NCBI GenBank assembly: GCA_000320545.1
Contig: ADNK01001509.1
Location: 62,001-126,000 of the forward strand
Origin: Bigelowiella natans CCMP2755
Lineage: Eukaryota > Protista > Cercozoa
Length of the DNA: 64,000 bases
Reading direction: 5' to 3'
Below the pieces are notes generated by a model. The model did not search any database. It was not told where the DNA came from and worked only from the letters and a program-made list of their open reading frames with translations. A program made the translations under genes and the position numbers. Of the stretch, positions 17,941 to 24,112 are shown one piece after another (the stretch's first letter is position 1; each line of letters begins with the position of its first letter).

Positions 17941-20079
17941 CTAATGCACTTCCAACTGGAGCAGGGGCGATGCGAAAGCTATATCCATATGGACCAAAAC
18001 TAGATGAAGAACGAGTATGATGATTATAAATTGCAGCAATTAGTACAAAGACAAAGATGAAATTATCTACTGTCATTGTACTACCGTTCAAAGTTTTGGT
18101 GAGAAATGTAAGCTATCGCCCGATTACATTGCATAATCTCGCGCCTATACGAAGAACAACCATCAACGAGTAGCCACCATTTTGAATAAATCAGATCTTT
18201 ACATTCTCTGGGCTAGAAGGCACAACAAAGTCTCATTTTCTTCGTAGTCCTCCCTTACTGCCAATGAAATCCGGTACTCATTCTTCCTATTTGAGAGTGT
18301 TACAGTGGATACAGCACGGAGCAAGTCTTCCCTGCCAAAACTTTCTCTCATCTGTTGATTAAATAAAATGGGGAATGAAGAAAACTCAGAAGTTTCTCGC
18401 ATGATTTGTGGAACAGATTTAAATGCCGGCGTCGGGGCACTCAATTCCTTTCAAAATTTTTATGATTTATGCAGGAAGGTGATGAAGAAGACGCTACCAG
18501 GCTTCGTGCAATTCGCCCAAACCATCTAAAAATGGTGTCTTTTGGTGATTCATCAACGTGCTGTAAACAGATAGGGCAATGATGAGACTCAAAAGTAGAT
18601 AAAAACACAAAGATGTACAAGAGAGAGGATAAACCTTCCTGACTGTCAGCATCAAAGCACCACCTTGCGGCCTCCCTCCCCGTTCCGACAACAAACTGCC
18701 TAAAGTCTGTTCAACATTGCCCGATTAGGTGTGCGAAAGGTCTGCAATGCCAAGTTGTTTGACATATCTGCATTGTTATTGATAATTACTACCTTCTCTT
18801 TCACGGTGTTGTGCACCAGAACAAGGTCTTCCCCTTGCAAGAGGCATGCGGATGCCTCCTGCCACTCCATAGCATCAAACTCATTATAATTGACTCGGTG
18901 ATTTTCTCGGAAAAGTCCCCTTAGGCGGTGCGTCTGTCGCTTGTAAATTCCGTCTGCGCGCTGAGAGTATTCGGATTTCACGTGGTCGATGCATGCGTAG
19001 AAGGGCGAGCTTCCATCATACAAAATCTGAAGCTCGTTCGATGATTCTTTTCCCTCTTGATCTTTCTCTTGCTTGGTCTTCTGTTTCTCGCTAGGCACGG
19101 CTTCAGTGTACTGCGATGGCATTGTGTTGTTTCCATCAATTTCCAGATCATCTATTTTGTTGTTGATCTCCTCCTCGAGACTTACCTTCTCTTTGAAAGA
19201 TCCAATGGTTTCATTTATCGCCAGCTTTTCATCTTTGCGTTCCTCTATTGTTAGAGCCTTGAGTCTCGCCAGATTTTCTTCCTCCGCCTCTCTGTCATCC
19301 TCTTCATCTGCTGTGAAGTTATAGCCGGGGAACATCCACTTATGCTCGTCGCGCTTCGGGTCGTAGAGGTCCTTCAGGTTAAGATCCCCTTTAACTTCAG
19401 GGTCTATTTGATCTAATAAGTTGCAACGCTCTGCTGTTTCCACAAGCCAGCGGTCCATTAAGACATCCCTCCGTTTCTTTGGCCAAGCAGCGGTCTCCTT
19501 TCTCGAGGGTACGTATGCTAGCGTGGACACCGCTTCATGCGGATACCCCTCCTGCTCCAGAAACCCCATGAACCCTCCTACTTCCTCAAGGTACTTGTTG
19601 ACACGTTGCATAGGTGTATCGTCCCCTGTGGACTCGAGCGGTGATTCGTAGTCAGATGGTACCCCTTCATTCGCTAGTCGCTCATACTCCTCACTCGTAT
19701 CCGTTTCTGCGAAATTCGGAACGAACCCATCATCCTCCTCTTTTCTATGGGAAGCATCGGTGTCTACTTCATCCCAGCAACGATACTGCTGCCAATTATC
19801 CTCTTCAGTTTGCGTTGTGTCGGGTACCTCTTCTCCTCCCCCGTGGCCCTCTGACTTTGCACTGGGCAGAGATGCCTTCAGTATCAAAGGAGCGACGGTT
19901 GCGACGCTGAACGATAAAATCATGGCACCTGCTCGCTGATAATCAAAACGGTTCTTATTTTTAGAAACCCTAGGGTATCTGCTCTGGATGCATGGAGCAC
20001 TAGAGCATAGATCTTTTTCACCACCAGTGAGAAAACCGGCGTGCAGGCCATGGTGGTCATCCGGTTCCGAGGACGGCAT
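17941..20079 (-). CDS. Hypothetical protein with N-terminal hydrophobic segment, long acidic region and multi-exon C-terminus
   Basis: 463-aa ORF from ATG 20079, with further plausible exons ~18707-18636, ~18560-18498, ~18450-18203 and 17999-17941 (ending ...QRILVHMDIAFASPLLQLEVH*). No confident family. Confidence 0.6.
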
Positions 20080-20584
20080 ACTTATTTGCAACTGTATCAG
20101 TCATAGAAAAATTGAAAATGCATTAAAAACTTTGTTTACGAGCTCAACGATAGGCAAAAATCATTACAGTGTGTCTTCGGATGCCCCGCTCTCGCTTAAT
20201 GCCTTCTGTAGCAATGAGCAGGACGAGTGAGATCAAAGAGGCTATGCACCATGGATCAGCCCAGTTCCTGCCTCTACAGGTTCTCCGGTTATTGTGTCCC
20301 CGAACTCTCATGAGGATCATCAATAAGATCCACCCCTTGGTTTTATCACAGGCCCAATGTTTCAGTGAACCACACCCCCTTCCGGTGTGATGGTGGGTCC
20401 CACCGCAGTTGGGGTGTGCGTTGTTTTAAATTCAAACGGCCTGCTTTCTTGCTCCAAGCTATCACTATTTTCCCCTGCGACAACCAATATCCTTGTCGCT
20501 CCTTGTGAAACTCAGTGGATCTACAGATAAAAAGCGACATTCGCGGAACGGGTCGGAACACGGAACGGGAGCAAGACTCTCTTG

Positions 20585-21920
20585 ATGCCACCTCGAACAA
20601 GGAAAGGAAGGAAGAAAAAGACGGAGGAGAAGGAGGAGGGGGAAGAAAATCCTAGTGCTACCTCACCCAGTGAGTCCAGCGCGTTTGGTGGCTTCGATCT
20701 ATCGAACTTTTTCGGGAATTCGAACTACTATAAGTGTGGCAGGCTCACTGAAACCTTGGTGAGCGAGATCTTTCATAAACCCCATTCGTCGTCTTTAAAC
20801 TAATGCATCATGTCTCTCAGATCACGGAGTTCGAGGAAAAGTTCGATTACAAGCTCCCAGCGTCATATGTTGAACTGCTTAGTGTTCAAAATGGCGGGAC
20901 CCCAAAGAAAACACTCTTTGCTGCGGCTGGGACAAGCTGGGCCCCCGACCACGTTGCAATATCTAGTATCAAAGGCCTTGGAGGCAACGAATGGGGCTTG
21001 GATGGAAGCCTTGGTCAAAGCAACTACTATGAATGGGGATATCCAAAGATTGGAGTCGCTATATGTGACTGGTTATGCACAAACAAGCGCGCACTCACCC
21101 ATTAGCATCATGGTTCATAATTCAATGTAGTATCAATAGTATTTTATTCACCAAAACAATGCGACTCCGTCGAACGACGATCCTTTGCTTTTTGCATCCC
21201 TTTTCTAAGCTATGGTGCTGGGCTAACACACACAGCAAAACACAACACACGCACGCAAGTAAGCCCACTCAACTCTACACGGTGCAAATCTTTTTATGTC
21301 CGAATTTCAGTCCATCCGGAGGCCATGATATGGTCGTTCTCGACTATAGAAAATGTGGCAGAAAGATGGAAAAGGGTTTTGAGCCATCTGTTGTCCACAT
21401 CGACCAAGAATTTAATTTCAAACGAACCTTCTTGGCGAAGGATTTCGCTACATTTATTAAGGGGTTGAAGTCTGAAAACGACGCAGATGATTTACGGGAA
21501 CAACGGAAGAAGAAAGCAGAAAAAAAGAAAGGAAAGAAGCGAGGCAGAAGTAATGAGAATGGTAAAGACAAGGCCGATTCATCATCTAATCGTAAGCGCG
21601 GGAAAAAAGGTAATACAATACGAGATACGGTAAATGGAAGCGGTAGAGATAGACAACATTTCGCAATACCTCAAAGTGTGCATGATTTTGTATATGCCAT
21701 AGATGATAGCCCAGAGTCGAATGTGGATATCATCGAAGAACTTGAAAGACAAGGAGCAGCGGAGATAAACAAATTTAAGCAAAAAGCTTACATAAATGCC
21801 GCAAAAGCGCTGAAGCGATGTAAGAAGGCCATTACATCCAGCAAGGATATAGCACACTATAAAGGCATTGGAAAATCGGCCAAAATTTTAATTGATGAAG
21901 TTATAGCTGGTCGTGACTGA
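20585..21920 (+). CDS. SMI1/KNR4 (SUKH) family domain fused to a DNA polymerase X/beta-type N-terminal helix-hairpin-helix (HHH_8) domain, 344 aa; join(20585..20758,20821..21071,21311..21920)
   Basis: Splicing of two GT-AG introns restores LTETLITEFEEKFDYKLPASYVELLSVQNGG...TSWAPDHVAI...[30 protein letters not shown]...EPSVVHIDQE...FLAKDFATFIKGL, which follows the bacterial SMI1/KNR4 pattern. C-terminal NVDIIEELE...KFKQKAYINAAKAL...ITSSKDIAHYKGIGKSAKILIDEVI matches the PolX 8-kDa pattern. K/R-rich NLS-like segments at the N-terminus and in the linker. Confidence 0.88.
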
Positions 21921-22932
21921 AGATAATGTATTATCAGGAATACAGTGCGAACTTCGTTGACGCATATGATGCGTTGCTGCAGGCATGCTAACATAGTCAT
22001 AACAGCGTAGCAATCTATTCCCTGCTACAATTAGTGAAGGCTGTATTGGTGAAGCATGGCGTTTGGCAACACTTCTTGTCAGCCATGTTATCATCTAGTC
22101 ATCGCCTAACGCAATACATACGTGAGCCATATCTAGCATATGCTTAGCTAGCTGTGATGCGGGCAAGTGCAACCTGCATGCATGCTAGCATGGCGTTGAT
22201 CAAATATTGTACATATCGCTCAATGCTGTTCGCATGTCTAGCTATAGATGCTTGAATGTCCATCTGCTACACGGCAGACGTACGTTAACGGACTCTATCT
22301 TATCATTTACAAGCCGTACCACTAAGACGAGCATGATATCTGGTACAGCTATACAGCGCATAGTTACTCTAGTACTCGCGTCGTGCAACTGTGTAGGAAC
22401 ATTCTAGCATTGCCTGTCGCACTGCACAGATGCTTCACGGTAGTAAAATACAGATCCCACACATATCTCAAAAAGGACACGCGAAACTATCAAACTCGAT
22501 GCCTCTAATGGAAGTTGCTACATACAAGCTAATGATGCAAACTCGCAGCCATTCCATAATACATGTATCAACTACGTCTCGCCCAAAATTCATTTTTTAA
22601 TTTAGATAAAACTACGGTGTTGCATTCAGGAAGTATTTGTTCATAGGCAACAGCAATTATTACTATGCTACGTCAATGGGATAAATTAAACTATACATTA
22701 AACAGTATAAAACCTAGTTAAGTGACTATGGGCGTGAAGAAACTACACAAATTATATTCTCAAATCCTTTATCATATATATACGAAGACCAGGTTCATCA
22801 AAGTATTTTATTTTCTCTTTTCAAGCACAATTGGCATCTCATTTTCTTATTTTTTTAACTCATTCTCCTTATCCTCTGTAAAATCTGTAATGAAGTCGGA
22901 AAACAAAGCAACAACACTATGCTTTTGTAGCC

Positions 22933-24112
22933 TTATCTTCTGCTCATTTGATGTGTTTTCTTGAACCTCTTTTCAGTTTTGGTTGGTGACATCGCAAACG
23001 CTAGTTTTCTTTTGGGTTGATGATGCAGAGGTCCTGTCGCCACTGTATAGCTGTTATTCCGCTCAACTTTGATCTTCAAGGAAGGAATCTTCCTCTTTTG
23101 TGCAGCGTTTGGCATTTTATCCATCAGGAACGGATGCTGTAGTATCTCCTTCAGGGTCAATCTTTCACTCTCAGGGAGGAATATCTTAGAAAGTAGATCG
23201 GCTAGCGTGGCATCGATCTTCCAATTTTCTTGTAGAGATCGTGCACCTCCGGTGAGGAGTGTATATCGTTCGTTCATTTCAGTGGGACTATCTGTGATAC
23301 TGAGACCAAGCTTTCCTGATGCCATGGCCAGAGCACAAAGCCCCAACCCCCATACATCACATTTTTGGTGGTCGAAAACTTCTCCACAGAATCGTTCGGG
23401 CGGCATACAATGAGACTTGCCTCCTCCACCAAAATCAATCAAGCGCACCTCGGTTCTTTCATTCTCTTTATGTAGCATGACGTTTTCGGGAGTTACGTCC
23501 AGGTGAGAAAAGCCTCGCTCGTGCACGTACATCAGCGCTAGAGTAAGCTGGCGAGTAAATAACCTCACTTCACGCACAGGGATACCGCTGTCAGGGATAT
23601 TGTCGATAAGATCTCCGCCATTGCACCAGTCAACCGCCACTGCCAGCCGTGATGAATTCTCGAGCCAACCCACGAGGTTGACCACGTGTCGCCTTCCAGG
23701 GTGCTCTCTTTGCTTCTCACTCGAGAGCGCTTTGAAGATTTTTATCTCTCTCTCAGGACTTTCACCGTTGTAGTAGTATCTTATCCTTGAACAGTCGGTA
23801 ACCTATTCAAAGCAGGAAAATGATATCAGCAATTTTCAATACTTCGCAGAATAATACGTGTCCACATACCTTCAGGAGGACTCTTTTTTGGTCTGTGAGT
23901 CGAATTGCTTCGTAGGCGCTCCCAAAAATTGTGGGATGGATCTTACTTACAATGTGGTAGTCTTTTGCATGAATTTCTACCGGTAGAAAAATGTCTCCTG
24001 TTTTAGAACGGGGGGAGGGAACAAAGGGGGATAGGTCAGTTACCACTGCACGTGGGCTATAAGTTGATGAGCGTACCTTGATATTTTGGATGATAACTTG
24101 TTTTTTTCCCAT
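22933..24112 (-). CDS. Ser/Thr protein kinase (CAMK-like); complement(join(22933..23802,23870..24112))
   Basis: Subdomains TIFGSAY, VLLK, ESPEREI, HLDVTPEN, IDFG, MPPE, CDVWGLG, ERLTLKEILQHPF. Phase-0 GT-AG intron 23869-23803. Confidence 0.85.

What the first reader, a model, noticed from the sequence alone, without database searches (positions are those of the whole stretch)
20585..21920. Bacterial-type toxin-immunity (SMI1/KNR4, SUKH) domain domesticated in a eukaryote and fused to a PolX DNA-break-binding HhH domain
Seen: after removing two GT-AG introns (one splits the CDC|PSGGHD motif), the N-terminal domain closely follows the bacterial SMI1/KNR4 subfamily pattern (KLPASY...QNGG...TSWA.DHVAI...EWGYP.IG..ICDCPS.GHDM..LDYR.CG...EP.VVH.DQE...FLA.DF.TFI.GL). 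It is followed by a K/R-rich NLS-like linker (~21500-21610) and a PolX 8-kDa-like domain (~21715-21917) with no polymerase core. Known: SUKH proteins are immunity proteins of bacterial polymorphic toxin systems, often against nuclease toxins, and the Pol beta 8-kDa domain binds gapped or nicked DNA. Inference: a horizontally acquired antitoxin is redirected to the nucleus and to DNA lesions, protecting the alga against nuclease effectors from prey or associated bacteria, or serving as a new repair scaffold. No cognate toxin is adjacent.
Basis: partly seen in the sequence, partly recalled or inferred. Interest (0 to 1): 0.86.

Follow-up and report, generated by a model that had tools for sequence, protein, structure and literature searches.

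The report
Algal SUKH protein fused to HhH domain
An expressed nuclear gene of the alga Bigelowiella natans joins a bacterial-type SUKH protein-binding domain to a small polymerase-X-like DNA-binding domain, a combination found nowhere else, but its function and the route by which the alga got it are still unknown.

Summary
Window 20585-21920 (+) is a real, spliced, expressed gene, identical to JGI Bigelowiella natans model 88541 (313 aa).

The protein has four parts:
- a basic N-terminal tag;
- an SMI1/KNR4 (SUKH-1) domain;
- a linker that is half Lys/Arg;
- a C-terminal HHH_8 (PolX 8-kDa-like) helix-hairpin-helix domain, with no polymerase core and no lyase lysine.

Among 1.84 billion representative proteins, only this protein and an orthologue in another chlorarachniophyte transcriptome have both domains.

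The SUKH domain is 45-57% identical to a large bacterial subfamily found in more than 505 genomes, often fused to other immunity domains. The same subfamily also occurs in Symbiodiniaceae, Chromera, Anaeramoeba, two eukaryote-like metagenome contigs, and a second intron-bearing paralogue in this genome. Trees do not show whether Bigelowiella got the domain directly from bacteria; one eukaryotic clade is not rejected (AU p=0.14). The origin of the HhH domain is unresolved.

A nuclear anti-toxin role is untested. I read the protein as a DNA-tethered protein-binding adaptor. This is a new variant of a known kind (eukaryotic recruitment of SUKH domains). The scan had noted this stretch twice and the paralogue once.

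The parts
20548..20584 (+). 5' untranslated region (approximate transcript start)
   Evidence: Contigs of runs X1, X3 and X6 begin at 20548-20555. There is no ATG before 20585 in this stretch.
20585..20758 (+). Exon 1 (58 codons): basic N-terminal tag (8 K/R in 22 residues), then the start of the conserved SUKH subfamily domain (the F.DFDL.NF motif)
   Evidence: The translation equals P0003 residues 1-58. Bacterial homologues align from about residue 30.
20759..20820 (+). Intron 1, 62 nt, GT..AG
   Evidence: The joint is seen in contigs of X1, X3 and X6. Splice dinucleotides checked.
20821..21071 (+). Exon 2: core of the SMI1/KNR4 (SUKH-1) domain
   Evidence: Pfam SMI1_KNR4 E 6.7e-9, 36.9 bits, profile 7-83. 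Equals P0003 residues 59-141 plus two bases of codon 142.
21072..21310 (+). Intron 2, 239 nt, GT..AG. It splits the Cys142 codon and is retained in part of the transcripts, where retention brings a premature stop.
   Evidence: Spliced joint in X1 and X3. Retained in the X6 contig and in MMETSP transcript P0002.
21311..21500 (+). Exon 3, first part: C-terminal third of the SUKH domain (PSGGHD ... VVHIDQE ... FLAKDFATFIKGL)
   Evidence: Pfam profile 85-124. Alignment A1. AF2 pLDDT about 90, and Foldseek top hits are bacterial SMI1/KNR4 structures.
21501..21609 (+). Exon 3, second part: K/R-rich linker, predicted disordered, NLS-like (18 K/R in 36 residues)
   Evidence: Composition. pLDDT is below 50 for residues 226-243; a predicted helix (197-218) runs on into the first part of the linker. 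78% identical in the orthologue P0004.
21610..21702 (+).
   Evidence: Joint in X1, X3, X6 and one raw RNA read pair of X23. Absent from P0002, P0003 and P0004.
21703..21920 (+). Exon 4: HHH_8 helix-hairpin-helix domain (PolX 8-kDa-like) and the TGA stop
   Evidence: Pfam HHH_8 E 7.1e-9. Best solved relative by sequence is the Pol lambda 8-kDa domain, E 0.02. The AF2 model (pLDDT 84) matches the Pol beta and Pol lambda lyase domains at TM 0.70-0.75. 94% identical in P0004.
21921..22006 (+). 3' untranslated region (approximate)
   Evidence: Contigs end at 21952-22006.

Best explanation
This is a genuine four-exon nuclear gene of Bigelowiella natans (JGI protein 88541, 313 aa). It is transcribed and spliced, and it is conserved in a second chlorarachniophyte.

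The protein has four parts: a short basic N-terminal tag; a SUKH-1 domain of a highly conserved, mainly bacterial subfamily; a disordered Lys/Arg-rich linker; and a C-terminal HHH_8 domain of the PolX 8-kDa type. The HHH_8 domain keeps the GIGK hairpin but has Leu where Pol beta and Pol lambda carry the dRP-lyase lysine.

Most likely mechanism (inferred, not shown): the basic segments take the protein into the nucleus. The non-catalytic HhH domain holds it on DNA, possibly at nicks or gaps. The SUKH domain, which in all characterised relatives is a protein-binding module, binds one or more partner proteins there. The protein would then act as a DNA-tethered adaptor or inhibitor of a nucleic-acid-acting enzyme.

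Likely history: the SUKH module descends from a bacterial lineage but has been in eukaryotes long enough to gain introns, duplicate and appear in several protist groups. The HhH exon was added in the Bigelowiella lineage. The nearest relative sharing the QMEKG insertion (P0013) has an acidic tail instead.
For: Gene and expression:
- All exon translations equal P0003.
- All three GT..AG joints are present in contigs of three runs.
- One 1251-nt contig carries the SUKH exons and the HhH exon together.
- MMETSP transcripts P0002 and P0004 exist.

Domains:
- Pfam matches are above the curated cut-offs for both domains.
- The SUKH fold is modelled at pLDDT about 90; the best structural matches are BF1740, Listeria 2icg, Syd and YobK, then Knr4 and FBXO3.
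- The HhH model matches the Pol beta, Pol lambda and Mus81 HhH domains.

Uniqueness of the fusion:
- Of 782 hits in 1.84 billion representatives, only P0004 and P0002 reach the HhH part.
- None of the other eukaryotic homologues has HHH_8.

Selection: between the two species the HhH domain is 94% identical, the SUKH domain 85% and the linker 78%.

Loss of catalysis: the Pol lambda K312 position aligns to Leu and the R308 position to Ser.

Bacterial kinship: 45-57% identity to proteins of Chryseobacterium, Paenibacillus, Hymenobacter, Polyangiaceae, Colwelliaceae and others.

Long residence in eukaryotes: introns, a divergent paralogue, and homologues in Symbiodinium, Effrenium, Chromera and Anaeramoeba.

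SUKH domains as protein-binding adaptors in eukaryotes: PMC3113570.
Against: - No localisation, DNA-binding or partner data exist.
- The HhH model was built with PolX sequences in its small alignment, so its fold match is partly circular.
- In the whole-protein model the HhH part was poorly predicted.
- HhH domains can also mediate protein contacts.
- The subfamily's near-invariant His/Cys/Asp/Glu residues hint at a metal site or an activity rather than a plain binding surface.
- Much of the mRNA retains intron 2, which would truncate the protein.
Confidence: 0.45

Rival explanations
1. The protein is a working antitoxin: a bacterial immunity protein taken up by the alga, sent to the nucleus and to DNA breaks, where it neutralises nuclease effectors delivered by prey or associated bacteria.
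For: - The SUKH superfamily is the classical immunity partner of nucleic-acid-degrading polymorphic toxins (PMC3113570).
- The closest bacterial relatives are fused to other immunity domains: Imm51, Imm68, Imm33, DUF4253, DUF4261.
- The HhH domain and basic linker fit a DNA-proximal location.
Against: - No toxin gene lay next to the bacterial members examined. Neighbours were nuo genes, SHMT, an aldehyde dehydrogenase, a peptidase, Sel1 and another SUKH gene.
- The subfamily is about 50% identical across bacterial phyla and protists, with near-invariant polar residues. That is unlike immunity proteins that co-diversify with toxins.
- The gene is single-copy for this architecture, with no lineage-specific expansion.
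- The earlier survey concluded that conserved eukaryotic SUKH lines took on roles distinct from toxin immunity.
Confidence: 0.15
2. The SUKH subfamily is not an immunity or binding module. It is a conserved metal-binding or enzymatic domain, using the His102, Cys142, His147, Cys157, His171, Asp173 and Glu175 set. The fusion brings that activity to DNA.
For: - These residues are kept in 85-98% of 351 domains from many bacterial phyla and several protists.
- Identity between kingdoms is 45-57%.
- Bacterial members often stand alone among housekeeping genes.
Against: - No catalytic SUKH domain is known.
- Structural neighbours are non-enzymatic immunity or adaptor proteins.
- Fusion to Imm domains fits the immunity context.
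Confidence: 0.2
3. The protein acts in conflicts with giant viruses or other mobile DNA. The HhH module would come from a giant-virus gene, and the SUKH domain would bind a viral nuclease or replication protein.
For: - The nearest clusters by protein-language-model features are stand-alone HHH_8 proteins of Nucleocytoviricota (score 0.92).
- Giant-virus PolX and HhH proteins are among the structural matches.
- The HhH exon has no paralogue in the host genome, and the host PolX 8-kDa domain is split over several exons and dissimilar.
Against: - Atlas scores of 0.9 occur by chance in 4-10% of shuffled queries, and the method favours clusters of similar length.
- No relative was found in IMG/VR by pattern search.
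- No short homologue was found (a blank of limited weight).
- Cellular PolX domains are equally similar, at 27-33%.
Confidence: 0.08
4. The fusion is a neutral product of exon shuffling. The HhH tail has no DNA-related role, and the protein works like the tail-less SUKH proteins of other protists.
For: - The architecture is confined to one genus-level lineage.
- The other eukaryotic homologues carry unrelated acidic tails.
- Frequent retention of intron 2 suggests loose processing.
Against: - The HhH domain is the best-conserved part of the protein between the two species: 94% against 85% for SUKH and 78% for the linker.
- It keeps the HhH signature GIGK and scores above Pfam's cut-off.
Confidence: 0.1

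Closest known systems
Bacterial SMI1/KNR4 (SUKH-1) immunity-type proteins of the CDCPSxGHD subfamily (e.g. Chryseobacterium and Paenibacillus SMI1/KNR4 family proteins; Paenibacillus methanolicus WP_148930833.1, a TPR-SUKH-Imm51 fusion)
   Same: - 45-57% identity over about 170 residues, including the N-terminal F.DFD..FW motif and the C-terminal FLAKDF.TFIKGL helix.
- The same near-invariant His/Cys/Asp/Glu positions.
- The same fold.
   Different: - The bacterial proteins stand alone, or are fused to TPR repeats, other Imm domains, or an uncharacterised extension of about 150 aa. None has an HhH domain.
- The algal gene has introns, basic tags and a 4-residue insertion (RKME/RQME).
Tail-less eukaryotic members of the same subfamily (Symbiodinium microadriaticum OLQ05351.1, Effrenium voratum CAJ1455811.1, Chromera velia Cvel_969, Anaeramoeba flamelloides M0813_16404, contig protein P0013, and the second B. 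natans paralogue on G000:C3587)
   Same: - The same SUKH subfamily in intron-bearing eukaryotic genes or in transcripts.
- P0013 shares the QMEKG insertion.
- Low-complexity charged tails.
   Different: - No HHH_8 domain; the tails are acidic or the extensions coiled-coil.
- Intron positions differ.
- Kinship with the Bigelowiella fusion is neither shown nor rejected.
Classical eukaryotic SUKH recruits: yeast Smi1/Knr4, FBXO3/SKIP16, PGs2 (PMC3113570)
   Same: - A SUKH fold reused in a eukaryote as part of a multidomain protein, presumably as a protein-recognition module.
   Different: - These are much more distant. They rank below the bacterial structures in the fold search.
- Their partner domains differ (F-box/ApaG, disordered hub regions). 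None is DNA-binding.
The 8-kDa (dRP lyase) domain of family X DNA polymerases (Pol lambda, Pol beta, bacterial PolX) and the Mus81 N-terminal HhH
   Same: - Pfam HHH_8 above the cut-off.
- A helical fold with a GIGK hairpin.
- 27-33% identity to bacterial PolX; 24-29% to Pol beta and Pol lambda.
   Different: - No polymerase, BRCT or nuclease domain is attached.
- The lyase lysine (Pol lambda K312) is Leu, and R308 is Ser.
- The domain sits at the C-terminus of a SUKH protein.

Membership tests
SMI1/KNR4 (SUKH-1), Pfam PF09346 | Sequence match to the family profile above the curated cut-off | tested here: met
   Exon 2 alone scores 36.9 bits against a cut-off of 25.4. Exon 3 continues the profile at positions 85-124. 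PF09346 and PF14568 are precomputed for P0003.
SMI1/KNR4 (SUKH-1), Pfam PF09346 | SUKH alpha/beta fold | tested here: met
   The AF2 model has pLDDT about 90 over residues 30-210. Foldseek top hits are 3d5p (BF1740), 2icg, Syd and YobK, then Knr4 and FBXO3.
Polymorphic-toxin immunity protein (functional class) | Gene lies next to, or is co-transcribed with, a cognate toxin gene | tested here: not met
   The window neighbours are an acidic protein gene and a kinase-like gene. The neighbours examined at eight bacterial loci (12 ORFs scanned against Pfam or with precomputed domains) showed no toxin domain. Fusions to Imm51, Imm68 and Imm33 do place the subfamily in the immunity world.
Polymorphic-toxin immunity protein (functional class) | Binds and neutralises a toxin | not testable with these tools
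   No cognate toxin was identified, so no complex prediction was attempted.
HHH_8 / PolX 8-kDa domain, Pfam PF14716 | Profile match above the cut-off and a helix-hairpin-helix GIG motif | tested here: met
   36.4 bits against a cut-off of 30. KGIGK is invariant in the alignment with three bacterial PolX domains.
HHH_8 / PolX 8-kDa domain, Pfam PF14716 | Fold of the lyase domain | tested here: met
   The model has pLDDT 84. TM is 0.70-0.75 with probability 1.00 to the Pol beta and Pol lambda lyase domains, and 0.61 to the Mus81 HhH. Caveat: PolX sequences were in the 5-row alignment.
Family X DNA polymerase | dRP-lyase nucleophile lysine (Pol beta K72 / Pol lambda K312) | tested here: not met
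   The HMMER alignment to Pol lambda puts Leu at the K312 position and Ser at the R308 position (residue numbering from my own knowledge of Pol lambda).
Family X DNA polymerase | Fingers, palm and thumb polymerase core | tested here: not met
   The protein ends 3 residues after the HhH domain. There are no PolX core families in Pfam. The host's own PolX gene is elsewhere, on G000:C3589.
Gene acquired by horizontal transfer from bacteria | Closest relatives are bacterial, and the gene is integrated in the eukaryotic genome | tested here: met
   Best non-chlorarachniophyte hits are bacterial at 50-57% identity. The gene has three spliceosomal introns and its G+C content matches its surroundings.
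Gene acquired by horizontal transfer from bacteria | Supported nesting inside a bacterial clade, and absence from other eukaryotes | tested here: inconclusive
   Other eukaryotes carry the subfamily. FastTree groups Bigelowiella with them (support 75). IQ-TREE with the C20 model puts it beside a long-branch Tenacibaculum sequence (76/91). The AU test does not reject one eukaryotic clade (p 0.143), nor Bigelowiella plus P0013 (p 0.234).
Classical eukaryotic SUKH lines (Knr4/Smi1, FBXO3, PGs2) | Groups with these vertically inherited eukaryotic families | tested here: inconclusive
   None of the named rows among the 120 best hits is one of them; the 150 best carry no names. Knr4 and FBXO3 rank below the bacterial structures. 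No explicit tree including them was built, because no referenced sequences of them were at hand.

The most novel reading that the evidence does not exclude
A deeply conserved, Cys/His-bearing SUKH subfamily of bacterial origin has spread among several protist lineages. In Bigelowiella it has been wired to DNA through a captured non-catalytic PolX-type HhH domain, making a nuclear guard. The guard sits on DNA or at breaks and blocks (or regulates) a nuclease or deaminase-type enzyme, whether a bacterial or viral effector or an endogenous one. That would be a eukaryotic descendant of bacterial toxin immunity acting on chromatin.
Probability: 0.15. Interest if true: 0.8.

Novelty: new variant of a known kind. 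Interest (0 to 1): 0.45.

Why it matters
It has been known since 2011 that eukaryotes and DNA viruses reuse SUKH immunity domains. The known cases attach the domain to ubiquitin-ligase or cytoskeletal machinery, not to DNA. This fusion would be the first case in which the domain architecture itself points to a SUKH domain acting on DNA.

The work also shows that one unusually conserved SUKH subfamily is shared by many bacteria and by several unrelated protists: a chlorarachniophyte, dinoflagellates, a chromerid and Anaeramoeba. That raises two testable questions:
- What conserved partner or activity keeps the domain so constant?
- Did it move between eukaryotes?

If the protein does bind a nuclease on DNA, it would be a compact natural tool and an example of bacterial conflict systems feeding eukaryotic genome maintenance. 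If not, it is one lineage-specific domain fusion among many.

Tried and rejected
1. Short stand-alone homologues of the HhH exon. The search for homologous proteins with the 71-aa exon found no candidate. This blank covers only proteins of 39-124 aa that share exact words, so it says little.
2. Close viral relatives of the HhH exon in IMG/VR. There were 23 pattern matches, none confirmed.
3. A paralogue of the HhH exon in the alga's own genome. Only the gene itself was found. Other weak HHH_8 candidates (E 0.1-5) were unrelated; one I inspected is an ion-exchanger-like gene.
4. Recent duplication of the host PolX 8-kDa domain as the source. The host Pol lambda-like gene has its 8-kDa domain in several exons and looks dissimilar, and neither the Pfam nor the protein search of the genome connected it with this exon. 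Rejected as a recent source.
5. PHROGs scan. Nothing meaningful.
6. Shared intron positions as a test of common eukaryotic ancestry. Positions differ between this gene, its paralogue and the Symbiodinium gene. Uninformative.
7. Literature. No paper in the held library links SUKH with HhH, Bigelowiella, Symbiodinium or Chromera. The B. natans proteomics supplement is not held.
8. Spatial clustering of the conserved Cys/His residues. Model coordinates are not exposed to scripts, so this was left untested.
9. Bacterial contamination. Rejected, given the introns, the RNA joints and the eukaryotic flanks.
10. Joining exons. Searches used single exons by reference, or the database protein P0003, which equals the spliced product. 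The paralogue's exons were compared one by one and left out of the trees.
11. No complex prediction was run, because no partner is known.
Full report
**What is there**

The stretch 20585-21920 on the + strand is a protein-coding gene with four exons:
- exon 1, 20585-20758;
- exon 2, 20821-21071;
- exon 3, 21311-21609;
- exon 4, 21703-21920 (TGA at 21918-21920).

All three introns are GT..AG. It missed the third, a 93-nt in-frame intron at 21610-21702.

Each exon translation is an exact, contiguous piece of database protein P0003, the JGI Bigelowiella natans model 88541 (313 aa). The two split codons give C142 and D242. The window is therefore from B. natans or a near-identical strain; the tools place it at G000:C2228 in a 91.4-Mb assembly.

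Searches used single exons by reference, or P0003, a database entry identical to the spliced product.

**Expression**

Contigs from three public runs show all three joints (62, 239 and 93 nt skipped). One 1251-nt contig runs from the 5' UTR through the SUKH exons into the HhH exon and the 3' UTR. The transcript spans about 20548-22006. These three runs are marked only as probable RNA, but spliced joints show that they contain RNA-derived sequence.

Intron 2 is retained in that long contig and in MMETSP transcript P0002. Intron 3 is retained in a minority of contigs. Some of the unspliced contigs could be pre-mRNA or DNA.

A complete ORF with the same SUKH-linker-HhH order (P0004, 255 aa) comes from another chlorarachniophyte transcriptome.

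**Domains**

- *Pfam.* Exon 2 matches SMI1_KNR4 at 36.9 bits (cut-off 25.4), with the rest of the profile in exon 3. The last exon matches HHH_8 at 36.4 bits (cut-off 30).
- *SUKH extent.* Bacterial homologues align from about residue 30 to 205, so the conserved domain begins in exon 1.
- *SUKH fold.* AlphaFold2 models this part at pLDDT about 90. Its best structural matches are bacterial SMI1/KNR4 proteins (BF1740, Listeria 2icg, Syd, YobK), followed by yeast Knr4 and FBXO3.
- *Basic segments.* The linker (residues 206-241) has 18 Lys/Arg in 36 residues, and its second half (residues 226-243) is modelled below pLDDT 50. The N-terminus has 8 Lys/Arg in 22.
- *HhH domain.* Its best solved relative by sequence is the Pol lambda 8-kDa domain (E 0.02). 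It is 27-33% identical to three bacterial PolX 8-kDa domains, with an invariant GIGK. A separate model (pLDDT 84) superposes on the Pol beta and Pol lambda lyase domains at TM 0.70-0.75, and on the Mus81 HhH at 0.61. PolX sequences were in that small alignment, so this is supportive rather than independent evidence.
- *Lost lyase residues.* In the HMMER alignment the Pol lambda lyase nucleophile position (K312, my numbering from memory) is Leu and the R308 position is Ser. A catalytic lyase is unlikely. Three residues follow the domain, and there is no polymerase core.

**How unusual is the architecture**

A full HMMER scan of 1.84 billion representative proteins with P0003 gave 782 hits. Only P0004 and P0002 extend into the HhH part; all others match residues of about 30-210. 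None of the other eukaryotic homologues has HHH_8. Between the two species the HhH domain is 94% identical, the SUKH domain 85% and the linker 78%. The tail is therefore under at least as much constraint as the rest of the protein.

**Where the SUKH domain comes from**

The nearest relatives outside chlorarachniophytes are bacterial, at 45-57% identity. They include Chryseobacterium, Myroides, Chitinophaga, Hymenobacter, Flavisolibacter, Paenibacillus, Brevibacillus, Polyangiaceae, Colwelliaceae and Woeseiaceae. More than 505 species-level genomes carry a relative.

Longer bacterial members are fused to TPR repeats and to other immunity domains (Imm51, Imm68, Imm33, DUF4253, DUF4261). A bacterial origin of the subfamily is thus the economical reading.

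The same subfamily occurs in:
- Symbiodinium microadriaticum (a 14-kb, intron-rich gene), Symbiodinium sp. KB8 and Effrenium voratum;
- Chromera velia;
- an MMETSP transcript;
- two JGI contigs that look like eukaryotic cDNAs;
- Anaeramoeba flamelloides.

One of the JGI contig proteins, P0013, shares with Bigelowiella a rare insertion (QMEKG) at the same loop, and it has an acidic tail instead of an HhH domain.

B. natans also has a second, divergent paralogue on G000:C3587. It has at least three introns and a charged tail, and is only 30-41% identical to P0003, exon by exon.

The trees are unresolved:
- FastTree on 351 domains places Bigelowiella with the other eukaryotes (local support 75).
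- IQ-TREE with a site-heterogeneous model on 85 rows places it beside a very long Tenacibaculum branch (76/91), with the alveolate group apart.
- The AU test rejects neither a single clade of the nine chlorarachniophyte/alveolate/contig rows (p 0.143) nor Bigelowiella plus P0013 (p 0.234).
- Anaeramoeba sits elsewhere among bacteria (97*).
- Intron positions are not shared between this gene, its paralogue and the Symbiodinium gene.

Direct transfer, older eukaryotic residence and alga-to-alga transfer all remain open.

**Where the HhH domain comes from**

This is unresolved.
- The exon has no paralogue in the genome.
- The host's Pol lambda-like gene (BRCT plus a multi-exon 8-kDa domain, G000:C3589) is not similar.
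- No close relative turned up among short proteins or in IMG/VR (both are limited searches).
- Protein-language-model neighbours are stand-alone HHH_8 proteins of giant viruses (0.92), and giant-virus PolX proteins appear among the fold matches. Cellular PolX domains are just as close, so this is only a lead.

**Function**

- Nothing next to the gene is toxin-like.
- In bacteria, the neighbours I examined at eight loci were housekeeping or other immunity-like genes, not toxins.
- The subfamily is strikingly constant. H147, D153, Y154, C157 and E166 are kept in 93-99% of 351 domains, and H102, C142, H171, D173 and E175 in 85-90%. That does not fit well with immunity proteins that diversify with their toxins. 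It suggests a conserved partner, a metal site or an activity. I could not test spatial clustering.
- The 2011 survey of the superfamily argued that conserved eukaryotic SUKH lines act as protein-recognition modules rather than antitoxins. It lists no HhH fusion and no chlorarachniophyte. I found no later paper on this architecture.

**Best reading**

The gene-level and domain-level statements are shown. The mechanism is inferred: basic segments for nuclear import, a non-catalytic HhH domain that holds the protein on DNA, and a SUKH domain that binds a partner protein there, making a DNA-tethered adaptor or inhibitor.

The alternatives are a metal-dependent activity of the SUKH subfamily, a role in virus conflict, or a neutral tail. 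The last is disfavoured by the conservation of the HhH domain.

**Verdict**

This is a new variant (a new domain architecture) of a known phenomenon, and it is restricted to one algal lineage. Interest is moderate. It would rise sharply if DNA binding and a nuclease-type partner were demonstrated.

Noticed in passing
G000:C3587 about 77110-78180 (+); L094:1111-2181: A second, divergent intron-bearing paralogue of the same SUKH subfamily in this genome. It has at least 3 introns, an acidic then basic tail, and no HhH domain.
   Followed up: partly
G000:C3589; L095:3410-8600: The host's own Pol lambda-like family X polymerase gene. It has a BRCT-containing first exon and an 8-kDa domain split over several exons. 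Its introns are full of (CA)n/(GA)n runs.
   Followed up: partly
P0003 residues 102, 142, 147, 153, 157, 166, 171, 173, 175 (window exons 2-3): Near-invariant His/Cys/Asp/Glu positions across 351 bacterial and protist domains of this SUKH subfamily. This is unusual for immunity proteins and hints at a metal site or an activity.
   Followed up: partly
window 21072-21310 and 21610-21702: Intron 2 is retained in a large share of transcripts; this truncates the protein after exon 2 and opens a downstream ORF, as in P0002. The in-frame intron 3 is retained in a minority, adding 31 residues to the linker. This could be regulated splicing or just unprocessed RNA.
   Followed up: partly
P0005, P0007, P0009 and many ~322-aa hits: A very common bacterial form of the subfamily carries a conserved C-terminal extension of about 150 residues with no Pfam family.
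   Followed up: no
L006, L007, L008 (Logan contigs): In one bacterial lineage the SUKH gene (P0008) sits inside the NADH dehydrogenase operon, between nuoCD and nuoE.
   Followed up: no
L077:6602-7709: In a Muribaculaceae MAG the subfamily member is followed by a DUF2947 gene and another, distant SMI1/KNR4 gene. This looks like a small array of immunity-like genes.
   Followed up: no
window 22933-23685 (-) and 18700-20091 (-): The flanking ORFs are a protein-kinase-like exon downstream and a long acidic ORF upstream. Both are on the opposite strand, and neither is toxin-like by eye. They were not scanned against Pfam.
   Followed up: no
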